A stretch of DNA of 64,000 bases from Selaginella moellendorffii. Lineage: Eukaryota > Plantae > Lycopodiophyta. Below, in pieces: positions 28,174 through 35,075 of the stretch. The DNA lies in NCBI RefSeq assembly GCF_000143415.4, contig NW_003314270.1, positions 2,287,048 through 2,351,047 on the forward strand, given 5' to 3'. Numbering within the stretch: position 1 is the first letter of the stretch; each line of letters starts with the position of its first letter. A model generated the notes under the pieces. The model did no database searches, was not told the origin of the DNA, and was given only the letters and a program-made list of their open reading frames with translations. A program made the position numbers and the translations under genes.

Positions 28174-29677
<1,504 letters not shown>

Positions 29678-29863
29678 AAATCAAATTTTGCGACACCAGC
29701 GACGCAGATTTTCTACGTTGGTTTTGTTTGCGATAGAAATGAGAAAAGCTTTAGATCATTTGAAGTATAGCTTTTCTACATTGGTTTTGTTTGCAAGAGA
29801 TTAAAAATGATATCTTTGAGAAACGTTTTTAGATAATTTGAAGATGTTTTATTTGATTTGATC

Positions 29864-31962
29864 TTAGAGGCTGTGTGCCTCGAGGCCGGAGTGGAGGAGG
29901 GGATCGCTGATAACTTGCGGTTTGAACGCGTGCTTTGTATACTCATTGAAAAAGTTGGCATACAGATCATAGCGAGCGGTCATCCGGAGGCCCCATTTGT
30001 CTCGGACTTGCTGGCACAGATTCAAGTCGGCATCCACGACCATGAGCCCGTCCTGGAGCCTCGAGAGGCTCGGCGTGCACGAAGAGTCCGGGGCCGCCAC
30101 ATAGCTCGACCCGTAAAAGTGTCCAAACCCCTTGTGAGCCGGCTTCCCGTCACCCGACGTGAAAGCTCTCGGGAAAACCTCGGTGCCAACCCGGTTGATC
30201 GCGGCCACGAAGTAGCTGTTTGCTATTGCAGCGTTTCTCGCCTGGACAATGGATGGATGATCCAAAAGAGATTTTTGATTGCGATGAAGGGAAAAAAGAG
30301 TTTTTTCGTGCTTACCTCGATCGGCCACATTGGCTCGCTCAAGTCACCCACTGTTGCCGAGGGATTAAACACGATCTCCGCTCCGTTCATCCCAAACGCC
30401 TGCCAGTTGAGAGTGTGGTGCCTCCCGTAGCATATGTTTACCGCGATCTTTCCATACGCGGTCTCAAACACTGGATGGCCGGTGTTGCCTTCCATGTAGT
30501 ACGTGCTCTCGTTGAAGTCTCCAACGCGAGGGATATGGTTCTAGCAAATGGAGGAGGATTTTCAGAGACGAGAGAGAACAGAGAAAGAGCCTGACCTTTC
30601 TGTGCTTTCCGATCACGTTTCCATTGTTTCCAATCACCACGGCCGTGTTCCACAAGGTTCCACCGTGGACTTCGTCGCGCTCCAGGATGGGGCTGATGAT
30701 CACCATCTTAAACTTGCAAGCGAACATTTGCAAGAACTTTGTCGACGTGCCTTCCTCCGCGCTCTCGGCAAACTCGCACCATGTTTTCTCCCGCGTACAA
30801 AACGCGAAAGGCATCGTCCAAGCCTCCTACATCGAGAAAAGAAGAAAGATGGGTGTTGAGATGGAAAATGCAAAAAGCTTCCCTTCACCTGCAAGCAAAG
30901 TATGTTGACACCAGCAGTTCCAGCAGCTTCGATCAGATCCCCGACTCTCTTCATGATGGCTCGCTTCTGATCCGCAAAAGGAGCATCAGTTGGGAGAACT
31001 ATGGCGTTCTGGATGACGCCTATACGAACAATACGAGGAGCTCGCAACTCTTCCTCGGCAGCAGTAAACCTGTAAGCCTTCAAAGAAGACCCACATAAAA
31101 GTTGGTCTAGAAAAACTTTGAAAAAGAAAATAGATAAGTACCTGGAGATCAAAGTCGGCAGCAGTAGACATTGCCATTACTGCTGGAGGCAAAGGCAGCA
31201 TTCCTACGACACTCCCATTGTTTAATCCCAAGATCATCCTGCTTGCTTCCTAGGATCAGTGTTATCATCTGACAAAACGGAGAAACAATAAAGAAGTACA
31301 AAACTCTTTTTTACCTTGAAAACACCCGGTGGAAGATGATGCTTGAGCAGCCTATATAGCGAATCCGAGCCACCATCCTGAGGAACATCGCCAAGAGCAA
31401 CCACGCCACCTCCAACTCTCTCCAGATCCTCCACATCGCAGGCCTGCTCGTCCCCGCTCAGCTCTCGATCCGCGGCTCTCTTCAAGAAAGGAGTCGTTCG
31501 CTTCTTCTTCATGAGCCCAAACAAGCTGCTCATCTTCTCGTAGAACACCCACGTAGAATTCCCCATCCCTGTGGTGCTCGCCTTGAGCTGCTCGTTCTTA
31601 AACTTCCGCTTCATCTTGTCGATCTTGCTCTTGAGCTGCAGCACAGTGCGCAGCGTGCCGCCGCAGCGCCGGTAGAGCGACTCGCCAACCTCGGCCCACT
31701 CGCGATCGCTCAGCCCGGTGCAGCCACCACTCCTCGTCTCGATCCACTTCTCGTAGTAGATGTCGAGCAGCGCAAACGCCTCCTTGTCCGTCCATGCAGT
31801 GCACGGAGCGCGCTTGCGAGCCGAGAGCGCGACTTTGCTGCCGCACTGCGCGACCTCCTCGTCGTTGAACTCGTCGTTCTCTTCCTTTGGATGGAGCTCG
31901 TCGACGTCATTTGGATCCATGGAGGAGCAGTGCACCACTCTCTCCTCGTCGTGAATTTCCAT
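29864..31962 (-). CDS. PYD3: Beta-ureidopropionase with in-frame N-terminal trihelix/Myb-SANT-like domain
   Basis: Nitrilase triad motifs QEAW, KHRKNHIP and NICYGRHH. Exon 1 (31315-31962) holds the WT..E..LL...W..V...KIDKMKRKF...W..Y trihelix pattern and the PYD3 N-terminal DSLYRLL segment. Confidence 0.9.
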
Positions 31963-32725
31963 CGCAAAAGCCAGTCTTGCAGATCCCTTTGTCCTCCTGG
32001 AAGAAAAGGAGATGGAGATGAGCTAAGCCCCGCGGAAAAAAAGGGAAAGAAAGAAAAGGAGAGGCTCGAATGAAAAGAATGCATGAATTCGTGGAGATGA
32101 GGTGGATCCCTTGGGCGGAAGAACCGTGACGAAGTTTTTTTGGCACGAGGAACCATCGCCCAGATCTATAACAAAACTGGCACATACCTAAGCAGCGAAC
32201 GCCCGGCCCAGTGCTGTATTTCGCCCCTCCAAAACGCTCGGCAAAACGCTCGCGAGCCCCAAAAACTCTTTCTCTTTCCGGGCCCGCTGGGATCGAACCC
32301 CGGACCGCACGCCACGCGGACAAGTCAATGGGTACACGTCACATCACGCGTCCTGGCGCCACGTGTTCACCACCTAGATGGCTTTTTAGGGTTCTTGGCG
32401 AGCGCAGCGCGCGCGAGCTGGGGCCGGTGGGTACGATTGGAAGGTACTTCTCTAGGTAGCATCTGGCCGCCGAGGCATTTGAATTCGCGTGGGCGAACGA
32501 TTAGAGAGAGGCTTTATCTTTTCGTTCTCCTTCCCCCCTCTGGATGATGGTGATGATTTTATCTTGGCTCTTTAACTCTTCCAGTACCCGATCCCTCTTT
32601 TCCAAGTCCTTGGAGTTTCCGCTTCTGAGGCATGATGGCTCTCACATCTCGCTCGCTCTCGTTTCTCCTTTTTCGCTTTATCTCGTAGAGTCTTGACGAG
32701 CAAAGAAAAAAGAGGAAAGTGGATC

Positions 32726-35075
32726 ATGGCTTGCAGCAGCTCCTCAGGATCGCGGAGACCCAGCGCTTGCCTGCTCGATTTCGTCGACGAGCACATTCTG
32801 CTCGAGGTCCTGGGAAAGATCTCCGACAGTTTCGACCGGAGGAGCTGGCGGATGGTCTGTAGAACTTTCTACAAATTGGAGTGTAGTGTGCGCAGGCGGC
32901 TCCAGCTTCTCCGGGCCGAGCTCCTCCCCCAAGCTCTCGATCGATACGAGCGCTTGGAGGAGCTCGACTTGACGTGCTGCGCCGGTGTCACGGATGAGAA
33001 TCTCATCCATGTCGCGGATAAAGCTGGGAAGCGGCTGGCAGCCATCTATCTTAACAGGATCTGTGGGTTCACGAGCACTGGCCTGCGCTACTTATCTCAA
33101 CACTGCCTCTCGCTCGTAGAGATGGATCTTAGCTATTGTTCTTATGTGGAAGACGATGGACTTCTCGGCTTAGCCCGGCTCAACCGGATAGAAAAACTTA
33201 AGCTCACTGGCTGCATTAGAGTCACAGACATGGGATTGGAGAGCTTAGCAGCAGGATGTCACAGGCTGAAAACTCTCGTCCTCAAAGGCTGTGTGGCGAT
33301 CACTGATGCTGGCATTAAGCTCGTCGCTGCTCGCAGCGAGGAGCTAATGATCCTTGATCTTTCCTTCACTGAGGTAGTGGCATTTCTTTTTTTGTTTGTT
33401 CCCTTTTTTTTTTTTTTTTCTTTCGAGTAGCTTTTGTACTGTAAAGCTATCATTTCTTCAGGGTGCTAGCTAAGTGTCTCTGCTTTTGCAGGTAACGGAC
33501 GAAGGTGTTAAGTATGTTTCGGAGCTCAAGGCACTGAGAACTCTAAATCTCATGGCCTGCAACAATGTTGGAGATAGAGCTCTTTCGTATCTGCAGGAGA
33601 ACTGCAAGTCGCTTGTGGTAAGACTATAGCACAATATTCCTCTTTGGTGATTTCATTTTGGTGTGTGAAGGATTTGGACGTTTCTCGTTGTCAAAACGTG
33701 AGCTCTGTTGGGATTGCAGCATTGCCAACGTTGCTCACCTTACATCTCTGCCATTGCTCTCAGGTTCTTGCTCTTCTTTCCCGATTCTTTCTGAGATAAA
33801 TGCGAGACAAAACTCTTACTTTCGTTCCAGGTAACTGAAGACGCTTTCCTCGACTTTGAGAAACCGAACGGCATACAAACGCTGCGGCTGGATGGTTGCG
33901 AATTTACGCACGACTCGCTCGATCGCGTCGCGGCGGGATGCCAAGAACTCAAGGAGCTCAGCCTGTGCAAAAGCCGAGGGGTGACGGACAAGCGCATCGA
34001 TCGACTTATCACGTCATGTAAATCCTTGAAGAAGCTCGACCTTACTTGCTGCTTCGACGTCACTGAAATCTCGCTCCTGTCTATCGCCAGGAGCAGCACC
34101 TCCATCAAGAGCCTCAAGCTGGAGTCGTCCCTCATGGTCAGCGACAACAGCCTTCCTATGGTTTTCGAGAGCTGCCATCTTCTCGAGGAACTCGATGTCA
34201 CAGATTGCAATCTTACAGGTGCTGGTGAGTTTTCTCATACCGGTGGTTCTTCCTTGTTTTTAACTCGCGTGGTTTCTTTTTATCTTCTTTTTTCCAGGGC
34301 TTGAGCCGATCGGAAATTGTGTCCTTCTCAGGGTCTTGAAGCTGGCATTTTGTAACATCTCCGACTATGGGATTTTCTTCGTTGGAGCTGGTTGTCACAA
34401 GCTTATGGAGCTTGATCTCTACAGGTTCTCTCTCTTAAGTTTTTACTCGTAAAGAGATTAATTTGATCTCGTGCAGGTGTCGATCTGTCGGAGATGCCGG
34501 AGTGATCTCGGTCGTCAACGGCTGCCAGGACCTGAGAGTACTGAACTTGTCCTACTGCTCTCGAATCTCGGACGCGTCCATGACAGCCATAGCTCGCCTC
34601 AGCAAGCTCAGCCAGCTAGAGATTCGAGGATGCACACTCGTCACTTCCGACGGCCTCACGCAAGTCGCGGCGGGATGCAAGCGGCTCGTGGAGCTAGACA
34701 TCAAACGCTGCACGAGAATAGGCGATCCCGGACTACTTGCGCTAGAACACTTGTGTCCGGACCTGCGACAGGTTGATCTCTTTAGTTCTTCAAGTTCTCA
34801 TCTTTGTTTCGTTCTTCCAGATCAATGTGTCCTACTGCCCGCTCACGAACAACGGGATGATGGCGCTCGCCAAGCTCGGCTGCATGCAAAACATGAAGCT
34901 CGTCCACCTCAAGAACGTCTCCATGGAATGCTTTGGAAACGCGCTGCTCAACTGTGGAAGCCTCAAGAAGGTGAAGCTTCTTTCCTATGTCAAGCAGTCC
35001 TTGGCTTCCGGGGTGGTGGAGCAACTGGAAAATAGGGGGTGCAGGCTGCGATGCATGGACAAGCCAGATTCATAG
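32726..35075 (+). CDS. F-box/LRR-repeat protein (FBL3-like)
   Basis: N-terminal F-box (DEHILLEVL...WRMVCRTF) followed by many cysteine-containing LRRs; multi-exon. Confidence 0.9.

What the first reader, a model, noticed from the sequence alone, without database searches (positions are those of the whole stretch)
29864..31962. Trihelix DNA-binding domain fused in frame to beta-ureidopropionase
Seen: one uninterrupted exon encodes a Myb/SANT-like trihelix domain, a basic KKKR segment and then [17 protein letters not shown]. It splices in phase 0 (31315 to 31249) to EASRMILG and the rest of a PYD3 with the Glu-Lys-Cys triad motifs. Established: plant PYD3 is a stand-alone cytosolic enzyme for the last step of pyrimidine catabolism, producing beta-alanine. 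Inference: either a metabolite-linked nuclear regulator/enzyme, or capture of a Myb-like ORF (Harbinger transposons encode such domains). An internal Met (MKKKR) could give an enzyme-only isoform.
Basis: partly seen in the sequence, partly recalled or inferred. Interest (0 to 1): 0.78.

Follow-up and report, generated by a model that had tools for sequence, protein, structure and literature searches.

The report
Trihelix DNA-binding domain fused to beta-ureidopropionase
In the spikemoss Selaginella moellendorffii, the gene for the last enzyme of pyrimidine breakdown is transcribed and spliced as one message that puts a plant transcription-factor DNA-binding domain on the front of the enzyme; this combination sits in GenBank without comment, and its purpose is untested.

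Summary
On the minus strand, one exon (31962..31315) encodes a Myb/SANT-like trihelix domain (Pfam PF13837, E 1.4e-11), a basic KKKR linker and about 19 residues that take the place of the enzyme's usual N-terminus. It splices in phase 0 (31315 to 31249) to five more exons that encode a complete beta-ureidopropionase with the Glu/Lys/Cys catalytic residues.

Spliced RNA contigs from four studies carry every junction. Two contigs run unbroken from the 5' UTR through the trihelix exon into the enzyme exons. The trihelix ATG is the first AUG of the spliced mRNA.

The organism is Selaginella moellendorffii (window = GL377574.1). GenBank already calls a 592-aa product with PF13837 plus PF00795 on both haplotypes, so the gene model is not new. 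No paper in the searched library mentions the combination.

The two haplotypes differ at 13 coding sites, 12 of them synonymous (4 of 4 in the trihelix exon), which points to purifying selection. The nearest relatives of the domain are ASIL/ENAP1-type host trihelix factors (34-36% identity). There are no transposon signs.

Function, age of the fusion and presence in other Selaginella species could not be tested. The scan had already found the allelic copy on the other haplotype.

The parts
32188..32288 (-). 5' UTR exon. The 5' end is approximate, placed where an Illumina adapter follows position 32288 in one contig.
   Evidence: joint 31995->32187 in X1 and X6, and a loose end at 32288 in X1; the spliced leader is 135 nt and contains no AUG.
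31997..32187 (-). 5' UTR intron (191 nt, GT..AG), spliced in some runs and retained in others. When retained it adds three out-of-frame upstream AUGs (32185, 32156, 32084). Their ORFs overlap the main AUG and end at 31907 or 31710.
   Evidence: spliced in X1 and X6; unbroken contigs cross it in X3 (record 7) and X8 (records 15, 16), with a low-depth one in X1 (record 2)..
31315..31962 (-). CDS exon 1, 216 codons: acidic N-terminal tail, trihelix domain, linker and the start of the enzyme's N-terminal extension.
   Evidence: X1 record 1 and X6 record 10 cover 31314-31995 without a break.
31504..31800 (-). Trihelix (Myb_DNA-bind_4) domain, aa 55-153. It has three helices plus a fourth amphipathic helix. 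W57, W89 and W138 are conserved, and FYEKMSSL fits the fourth-helix motif.
   Evidence: PF13837, E 1.4e-11. (W57 and W138 invariant, W89 nearly invariant in 55 sequences). (AF2 pLDDT 90-98; helices at 59-77, 86-100, 107-131, 141-153). (Z 7.7 to Arabidopsis GT-1 2jmw/2ebi).
31372..31503 (-). Linker, aa 154-197, predicted disordered. It begins right after M151-KKKR and holds no further Met.
   Evidence: pLDDT 44-57. (in-frame Met positions and basic clusters).
31315..31371 (-). Last ~19 codons of exon 1 (..[18 protein letters not shown]). By collinearity this is the start of the enzyme's own N-terminal extension, and no Met stands where a canonical start would be.
   Evidence: exon 3 residue 2 aligns with human residue 57, so exon 2 (36 aa) plus about 19 aa fill the preceding 55 residues. 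This is arithmetic only; searches give no significant sequence match.
31250..31314 (-). Intron 1 (65 nt, phase 0), the seam between the two modules. There are minor forms. An alternative acceptor makes exon 2 start at 31238 (11 nt later, frameshift, stop after 29 more codons). Retention of the intron reaches a stop at 31234. Both would give trihelix-only ORFs.
   Evidence: joints 31248->31314 in all four runs; 31237->31314 at low depth in X3 and X8; unspliced piece X3 record 6. ORF 31234..31962.
31142..31249 (-). CDS exon 2 (36 codons), part of the enzyme's N-terminal extension.
30889..31077 (-). CDS exon 3 (63 codons), aligning with human beta-ureidopropionase residues 57-118.
30596..30826 (-). 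CDS exon 4 (77 codons). Its first residue is the catalytic Glu (human E119) and its last is the catalytic Lys (human K196).
30316..30540 (-). CDS exon 5 (75 codons), holding the catalytic Cys in NICYGRHH (human C233) and the equivalent of E207.
29864..30241 (-). CDS exon 6 (125 codons plus TAA), aligning with human residues 272-383.
29825..29863 (-). Minimum 3' UTR. It converges on the 3' end of the RuvB-like 2 gene (stop at 29677, plus strand), and one RNA contig runs across both genes.
   Evidence: X6 record 10 starts at 29825; X1 record 1 spans 29091-31995.

Best explanation
This is a genuine, expressed chimeric gene of Selaginella moellendorffii that selection appears to maintain. Its main mRNA encodes one 592-aa polypeptide: an acidic tail, an ASIL/ENAP1-like (SIP1-clade) trihelix DNA-binding domain, a roughly 45-residue disordered basic linker, and a complete beta-ureidopropionase (PYD3).

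Shown here: the exon structure, the splicing, the first-AUG position, intact domain hallmarks on both halves, and an excess of synonymous differences between the two haplotypes.

Inferred: the enzyme half is catalytically active, and the trihelix half with its basic clusters takes part of the enzyme pool to the nucleus and to DNA.

Most likely mechanism (speculative): beta-ureidopropionases shift between inactive dimers and active tetramers to octamers in response to substrate and product. That shift would change how many DNA-binding domains are presented together. DNA binding, and so transcription of target genes, would then follow pyrimidine-catabolite levels, as it does for the bacterial enzyme-repressor PutA.

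My odds by layer: real fused mRNA and ORF 0.93; enzyme half active 0.8; trihelix half functional 0.6; catabolite-gated regulator 0.25.
For: Four runs from four studies give spliced contigs with all junctions. X1 record 1 (2716 nt) and X6 record 10 (1941 nt) run from the 5' UTR through 31995..31314 into exons 2-6. Where exon 1 lies on a separate contig, its depth is close to that of the enzyme exons (X8 255-319 against 257; X3 18.8 against 26.8).

The spliced leader has no AUG, and the main AUG has G at -3 and +4.

Pfam hits are above threshold for both halves. The equivalents of the catalytic E119/K196/C233 and of E207/H173 are conserved. AF2 folds aa 55-153 at pLDDT above 90 into three helices plus a fourth. 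GT-1 is among the best structural matches.

The haplotypes GL377574.1 and GL377569.1 both keep the ORF. Exon 1 shows 4 of 4 synonymous differences (P 0.002-0.012 under neutrality); the rest shows 8 synonymous and 1 non-synonymous.

GenBank calls the same 592-aa product independently.

From the literature: ligand-driven oligomer shifts of beta-UP (PMC10741476); regulation of PYD genes by pathway intermediates with no known sensor (PMC2713857); an N-terminally tagged rice beta-UP that was soluble and had measurable activity (PMC9930899).
Against: There is no protein-level evidence that the 66-kDa fusion accumulates. The contigs cannot show transcript starts, so an internal start site is not excluded. 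The selection signal on exon 1 rests on four differences, and only two of them lie in the domain itself. No orthologue with the fusion was found in any other species, although the tools could not really look. The domain is only 34-36% identical to its nearest relatives, so its DNA-binding specificity is unknown. Arabidopsis PYD3 is cytosolic. The N-terminal extension of beta-UP takes part in the subunit architecture, so a large N-terminal addition could disturb assembly rather than exploit it.
Confidence: 0.4

Rival explanations
1. Passenger fusion. The fused protein is made and works only as PYD3, and the trihelix part is a tolerated N-terminal appendage with no function of its own. It would be a young lineage-specific accident, for example a deletion joining an upstream ASIL-like gene to PYD3.
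For: No relative of the fusion was seen outside this species. The domain is divergent (34-36% identity to ASIL-type factors). The C-terminal region of ASIL-type trihelix proteins does not align to exon 1. N-terminal tags are tolerated by rice beta-UP. pyd mutants have no obvious phenotype in Arabidopsis under optimal growing conditions.
Against: All four haplotype differences in exon 1 are synonymous. Every hallmark residue of the fold is kept, and AF2 confidence is very high. The reading frame is intact on both haplotypes.
Confidence: 0.3
2. One locus, separate products. Alternative processing yields mainly a trihelix-only protein (intron-1 retention or the alternative acceptor at 31238) and an enzyme-only protein, and the full fusion is a minor species. 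The enzyme-only form would start at M151 or later, after the overlapping upstream ORFs of the retained 5' UTR intron or from an internal start site.
For: Intron-1 retention and an alternative acceptor appear in X3 and X8, and both give in-frame stops soon after the trihelix part. The 5' UTR intron is retained at depths from about 4% (X1) to most of the signal (X3). Its three upstream AUGs open ORFs that overlap the main AUG and end inside the trihelix-coding region.
Against: The canonical junction dominates in every run (depth 249 against 18 and 63 in X8; 17.4 against 3.6 and 7.6 in X3). No Met exists near the canonical enzyme start, so M151 would leave a 47-residue leader. Contig depths are crude, and re-initiation after ORFs of 92-148 codons is usually inefficient (general knowledge).
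Confidence: 0.2
3. Captured transposon gene. The N-terminal module would be the Myb-like ORF of a PIF/Harbinger element that inserted into the first exon of PYD3.
For: Harbinger elements encode Myb/SANT/trihelix-like proteins, and plants have domesticated them (PMC5339849, listed).
Against: There are no inverted or direct repeats around the exon. The annotated neighbours include no transposase. There is no second copy in the window. The best named relatives are host ASIL1, ASIL2-like and ENAP1 factors, including one from S. moellendorffii itself whose domain sits at the same offset from the N-terminus (residue 55).
Confidence: 0.07
4. Artefact: a mis-assembly or an over-extended gene model.
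For: None found.
Against: The same structure is present on two independently assembled haplotype scaffolds and in RNA contigs from four studies.
Confidence: 0.02

Closest known systems
Eukaryotic beta-ureidopropionase / beta-alanine synthase (PYD3 in plants; human UPB1, PDB 8pt4 and 6ftq; Drosophila, PDB 2vhh)
   Same: Exons 3-6 align without gaps of note to human residues 57-383. The equivalents of E119, K196, C233, E207 and H173 are kept. The matches are far stronger than to other nitrilase-superfamily branches.
   Different: About 197 extra N-terminal residues carry a DNA-binding domain, and there is no Met at the canonical start. Arabidopsis PYD3 is a stand-alone cytosolic enzyme encoded by a single gene, and full-length his-tagged rice beta-UP is 48.9 kDa.
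SIP1-clade trihelix factors (ASIL1, ASIL2, ENAP1), including S. moellendorffii ASIL2-like XP_024542265.1
   Same: Same Pfam family. Identity over the domain is 34-36%. The domain starts at residue 55 in both exon 1 and the Selaginella paralogue. Conserved W-W positions, a KxKIDKxKxKF-type third helix and the fourth-helix motif are all present.
   Different: Only the domain aligns. The C-terminal part of these factors is absent here and is replaced by an enzyme.
Plant chloroplast RNase J with a C-terminal GT-1 (trihelix) domain
   Same: It is a precedent for a trihelix-type domain fused to an enzyme in plants (PMC7154860, found; the details are from my own knowledge).
   Different: The enzyme is different (metallo-beta-lactamase RNase), the domain is at the C-terminus, the protein is in the chloroplast, and the fusion is widespread in plants rather than confined to one lineage.
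Bacterial PutA (a DNA-binding domain fused to proline-catabolic enzymes; from my own knowledge)
   Same: It has the same logic as the proposed mechanism: an N-terminal DNA-binding module on a catabolic enzyme, so the enzyme's ligand state controls transcription.
   Different: There is no homology. PutA uses a ribbon-helix-helix domain, is bacterial, and switches through membrane association. For this gene none of that behaviour has been tested.

Membership tests
Beta-ureidopropionase (EC 3.5.1.6, nitrilase superfamily) | CN_hydrolase domain above Pfam threshold | tested here: met
   PF00795 in exons 4, 5 and 6 (40-50 bits each against a cut-off of 23.2), covering profile positions 40-255 collinearly.
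Beta-ureidopropionase (EC 3.5.1.6, nitrilase superfamily) | Catalytic Glu-Lys-Cys at the positions of human E119, K196 and C233, plus the loop Glu E207 | tested here: met
   the first and last residues of exon 4 align with E119 and K196. In exon 5, the C of NICYGRHH aligns with C233 and the E of FNESTYY with E207.
Beta-ureidopropionase (EC 3.5.1.6, nitrilase superfamily) | Closer to beta-UPs than to other branches of the superfamily | tested here: met
   E 1e-42 to 7e-40 for beta-UPs against 5e-9 for N-carbamoylputrescine amidohydrolase. Searches show the same ranking.
Beta-ureidopropionase (EC 3.5.1.6, nitrilase superfamily) | N-terminal extension of about 55 residues before the core | tested here: inconclusive
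   The length fits (collinearity), but exon 2 and the tail of exon 1 give no significant match to the animal structures. My recollection of an SLxxLL motif in plant PYD3 N-termini is memory only.
Beta-ureidopropionase (EC 3.5.1.6, nitrilase superfamily) | Hydrolysis of N-carbamoyl-beta-alanine | not testable with these tools
   This needs an enzyme assay.
Trihelix / GT-factor DNA-binding domain (Pfam Myb_DNA-bind_4) | Pfam PF13837 above the gathering score | tested here: met
   45 bits against 27, aa 56-147, profile positions 3-89 of 89.
Trihelix / GT-factor DNA-binding domain (Pfam Myb_DNA-bind_4) | Three helices with conserved tryptophans, and a fourth helix matching (F/Y)(F/Y)xx(L/I/M)xx(L/I/M) (definition in PMC4195496) | tested here: met
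   W57 and W138 invariant, W89 nearly invariant; helices at 59-77, 86-100, 107-131 and 141-153, pLDDT 90-98. FYEKMSSL lies at aa 140-147. The third-helix position holds I114 rather than W; I recall this as typical of the SIP1 clade (own knowledge).
Trihelix / GT-factor DNA-binding domain (Pfam Myb_DNA-bind_4) | Fold like the solved GT-1 domain | tested here: inconclusive
   Z 7.7 to 2jmw and 2ebi (74-76 residues aligned), with Sap1 at Z 9.6. Foldseek E-values are all above 0.1. Z values of this size are common for small helical domains.
Trihelix / GT-factor DNA-binding domain (Pfam Myb_DNA-bind_4) | Full-length architecture of an ASIL/ENAP1-type factor (domain plus C-terminal helical region) | tested here: not met
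   only aa 55-148 align to the Selaginella ASIL2-like protein, and the enzyme follows instead.
Trihelix / GT-factor DNA-binding domain (Pfam Myb_DNA-bind_4) | Sequence-specific DNA binding and nuclear localisation | not testable with these tools
   Only basic clusters were seen (RKR at 49, KMKRK at 116, KKKR at 152).
PIF/Harbinger-derived Myb-like gene | Terminal inverted repeats, target-site duplication, or a neighbouring DDE transposase ORF | tested here: not met
   no inverted repeats in 30900-32700; the neighbours are PIP5K, URO-D, Rad51 or an orphan gene, RuvB-like 2 and an F-box LRR gene.
PutA-type enzyme-repressor | Ribbon-helix-helix domain fused to PRODH/P5CDH, with autoregulation of its own operon | tested here: not met
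   The domains here are PF13837 and PF00795. PutA is an analogy for the mechanism only.

The most novel reading that the evidence does not exclude
The protein is a eukaryotic enzyme-transcription factor. Substrate- and product-driven assembly of the beta-ureidopropionase half (dimer to octamer) would set how many trihelix domains act together and so control their DNA binding. That would give Selaginella a direct sensor linking pyrimidine-catabolite levels to gene expression, a plant counterpart of bacterial PutA. Retention of the 5' UTR intron and of intron 1 would tune the ratio of fusion, enzyme-only and trihelix-only products.
Probability: 0.2. Interest if true: 0.85.

Novelty: new variant of a known kind. 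Interest (0 to 1): 0.55.

Why it matters
Plants regulate PYD genes in response to pathway intermediates and nitrogen status, but no sensor is known (PMC2713857). A natural fusion of the pathway's last enzyme to a transcription-factor DNA-binding domain is a 'Rosetta stone' hint that the two activities can be coupled. It offers a directly testable protein for metabolite-gated transcription in a eukaryote. If the domain turns out to be a passenger, the gene is still a clean, dated example of how a chimeric gene arises and is tolerated in a compact plant genome. It is also a warning for trihelix family counts and for PYD3 orthologue tables that include Selaginella.

Tried and rejected
- Word-index search with exon 1: nothing at 119-378 aa.
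- Exhaustive HMMER search of 1.84 billion cluster representatives with exon 1: only distant trihelix proteins, best 29-40% identity. Even the gene's own 592-aa product did not appear, so fused proteins may be hidden inside PYD3 clusters. This search therefore cannot prove absence.
- Alignment of exon 1 with a 579-aa hit, used to widen the length window. It also failed to return the known 592-aa product. I treat it as uninformative, not as evidence of absence.
- Exact look-ups of the 242-aa read-through ORF and of the 414-aa neighbouring ORF: not on record.
- Route through the neighbour: this worked and gave the species, both haplotype loci and the GenBank gene calls.
- Synteny route into other species through RuvB-like 2 on Logan genomic contigs: no PYD3 next to it. 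The species of those contigs are unknown.
- Metagenome scan with exon 1: nothing. ESM Atlas search: only plain Myb_DNA-bind_4 clusters.
- PDB sequence search with exon 1: nothing. Foldseek: only weak hits.
- Transposon capture: rejected for lack of repeats and of a transposase.
- A second PYD3 copy in the window: none. The rest of the genome could not be searched.
- In one search, exons 2-6 were concatenated in memory only to count codon changes.
Full report
**What is in the sequence**

The gene lies on the minus strand. An uninterrupted 216-codon stretch, 31962..31315, begins with ATG and ends at a GT donor. The next exon starts at 31249, after a 65-nt intron, in phase 0. Four more phase-0 GT..AG introns of 55-74 nt follow, and the CDS ends with TAA at 29864. 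The total is 592 codons over 2099 nt.

Pfam places Myb_DNA-bind_4 (PF13837) at aa 56-147 of exon 1 (E 1.4e-11, 45 bits against a cut-off of 27). It places CN_hydrolase collinearly across exons 4-6.

Exons 3, 4, 5 and 6 align with solved beta-ureidopropionases over human residues 57-383, with E-values of 1e-15 to 1e-47. The solved structures are human 8pt4/6ftq and Drosophila 2vhh. Other nitrilase-superfamily branches score far lower. The residues equivalent to human E119, K196, C233, E207 and H173 are all present.

**Is it one message?**

Contigs of four public runs from four studies were laid on 28900-33200. They lack the introns, so they come from RNA. Every junction of my model appears in all four runs.

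X1 record 1 (2716 nt) and X6 record 10 (1941 nt) cover 31995..31314 without a break and continue through exons 2-6. The same contigs show a further 191-nt intron in the 5' UTR (32187..31997) and an upstream UTR exon. In X1 an Illumina adapter follows position 32288, which suggests a fragment end near the transcript start.

In X3 and X8 the contigs break about 28 nt from the intron-1 junction. The likely cause is the minor variants that branch there. Where exon 1 is a separate contig, its depth is close to that of the enzyme exons: 255-319 against 257 in X8, and 18.8 against 26.8 in X3. Contig depths are crude and cannot show transcript starts. Even so, they argue against a dominant enzyme-only transcript.

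**Which AUG?**

The spliced leader (135 nt if the start is near 32288) has no AUG in any frame and no in-frame Met. The ATG at 31962 has G at -3 and +4. The fusion is therefore the predicted main product of the spliced mRNA.

After M151 (MKKKR) there is no Met until exon 2, so the canonical enzyme start has been lost. By collinearity with the human enzyme, the enzyme's own N-terminal extension begins near residue 197. This is arithmetic; the short pieces give no significant match.

**Variants at the seam and in the leader**

- **Alternative acceptor (X3, X8).** Exon 2 then starts at 31238, 11 nt later. This shifts the frame and reaches a stop after 29 more codons.
- **Intron-1 retention (X3, X8).** An unspliced piece crosses intron 1, and the reading frame then stops at 31234. 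Both of these forms encode trihelix-only ORFs.
- **5' UTR intron retention.** The intron is retained at very different levels: a low-depth piece in X1, and the main form in X3. When retained, it adds three out-of-frame AUGs whose ORFs of 92-148 codons overlap the main AUG and end inside the trihelix-coding region.

Alternative processing might therefore shift the balance between fusion, trihelix-only and enzyme-only products. This is inference only.

**Organism and existing annotation**

The neighbouring RuvB-like 2 ORF is 100% identical to two S. moellendorffii proteins, SELMODRAFT_80930 and SELMODRAFT_408955. Their loci are the two haplotype scaffolds GL377569.1 (L001) and GL377574.1 (L002) of GCA_000143415.2. 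The window is identical to L002 over the 3.1 kb compared.

On both scaffolds the GenBank annotation calls a 592-aa product over 2099 nt with PF13837 and PF00795. The gene model is therefore already public.

The literature library holds no paper that contains both 'beta-ureidopropionase' and 'trihelix', or both Pfam names. An earlier report of this scan (s1-341416) reached the same reading on the other haplotype. That is the allelic copy, not independent evidence.

**Selection**

The haplotypes differ at 13 coding positions. All four in exon 1 are synonymous (codons 101, 106, 170, 207). The rest are eight synonymous and one non-synonymous (L552F). Under neutrality, four of four synonymous has P = 0.002, or 0.012 if only transitions are considered.

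Synonymous divergence is similar in the two halves, about 0.03. This is modest evidence that the trihelix exon is under constraint, but only two of the four differences lie in the domain itself.

**What kind of trihelix domain?**

AlphaFold2, run with 54 homologues, folds aa 55-153 at pLDDT 90-98 into helices at 59-77, 86-100, 107-131 and 141-153. The first 54 residues and aa 154-216 have low confidence. W57 and W138 are invariant and W89 nearly so in the alignment. FYEKMSSL fits the fourth-helix motif described for trihelix factors (PMC4195496).

Arabidopsis GT-1 is among the best structural matches (Z 7.7), with Sap1, Zeste and TRF-type Myb folds nearby. Such Z values are common for small helical domains.

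By sequence, the nearest named relatives are ENAP1, ASIL1 and an ASIL2-like protein of S. moellendorffii itself. Identity over the domain is 34-36%, and the Selaginella paralogue's domain starts at the same offset, residue 55. The top-scoring hits of the exhaustive search are animal multi-repeat proteins, whose scores are inflated by their 7-8 domain copies.

I found no inverted repeats, no transposase among the neighbours and no second copy in the window. The likeliest origin is a host ASIL-type gene joined to PYD3, not a recent Harbinger capture. The mechanism of the joining was not determined.

**How it most likely works**

Firmly shown: one mRNA and one ORF, with both halves intact.

Inferred with good odds: the enzyme half is an active PYD3. 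N-terminally tagged rice beta-UP was soluble and had measurable activity.

Inferred with moderate odds: the trihelix half is functional.

Speculative: animal beta-UPs move between inactive dimers and active tetramers to octamers in response to substrate, product and pH (PMC10741476). A DNA-binding domain on a flexible linker at each N-terminus would then be presented in ligand-dependent numbers, which could make DNA binding follow catabolite levels. Plants do regulate PYD genes in response to pathway intermediates, and no sensor is known (PMC2713857).

PutA is the functional analogy. Plant RNase J, with its GT-1 domain, is a precedent for a trihelix-enzyme fusion. Against this idea, Arabidopsis PYD3 is cytosolic, and the N-terminal extension is part of the subunit architecture, so the addition might disturb assembly instead.

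**What could not be done**

The joined 592-aa protein was therefore never searched or folded. That blocked three checks:
- a direct search for the same architecture in other species;
- a look-up of the protein's own database cluster;
- a model of the oligomer.

Searches found no other fusion. Searches also failed to return the gene's own product, which is on record, so they cannot count as evidence of absence. Whether the genome holds a second, unfused PYD3 is also unknown.

**Verdict**

This is a real, transcribed, apparently constrained fusion of an ASIL-like trihelix domain to beta-ureidopropionase. So far it has been seen only in S. moellendorffii. It is already present as an unnamed gene model but is not described in the searched literature, and its function is untested. 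I class it as a new variant of a known kind and give it moderate interest.

Noticed in passing
window:31997-32187 (minus strand): Retention of the 191-nt 5' UTR intron of the fusion gene varies between runs. When retained, it adds three upstream AUGs whose long ORFs overlap the main start codon, so it could act as a translational switch.
   Followed up: partly
window:29677-29864: RuvB-like 2 (plus strand, stop at 29677) and the fusion gene (minus strand, stop at 29864) converge with only 186 nt between their stop codons. One RNA contig (X1 record 1) runs across both, so their 3' UTRs probably overlap as natural antisense.
   Followed up: no
window:26577-27845 and window:35294-36049 (both minus strand): A 414-422-aa ORF with no Pfam match is annotated as a 436-aa orphan protein. 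It has a partial, frame-broken look-alike about 8 kb away on the other side of the fusion gene; both share the motif ..GCLKME..LPLF.RL.TFG..NVFS.DPEAFLPAS... The second copy is probably a decayed duplicate.
   Followed up: no
L001:4276-6053 versus L002:5026-7335: The two haplotype annotations differ upstream. One calls a 485-aa product with no Pfam hit, and the other calls a 453-aa Rad51/HHH_5 product. This may be a gene-model difference or a structural difference between the haplotypes.
   Followed up: no
window:29733, 32529-32536, 32619: Small indels distinguish the haplotypes in the 3' UTR and in the region shared with the divergent F-box LRR gene. RNA contigs of different runs carry one or the other form, so both alleles appear to be expressed.
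   Followed up: partly
P0317 (SELMODRAFT_421085, 725 aa), seen: The 90% cluster of the Selaginella ASIL2-like trihelix protein also holds an older 725-aa model that UniRef names 'TRAF-type domain-containing protein'. This may be an over-merged gene model or another trihelix fusion.
   Followed up: no
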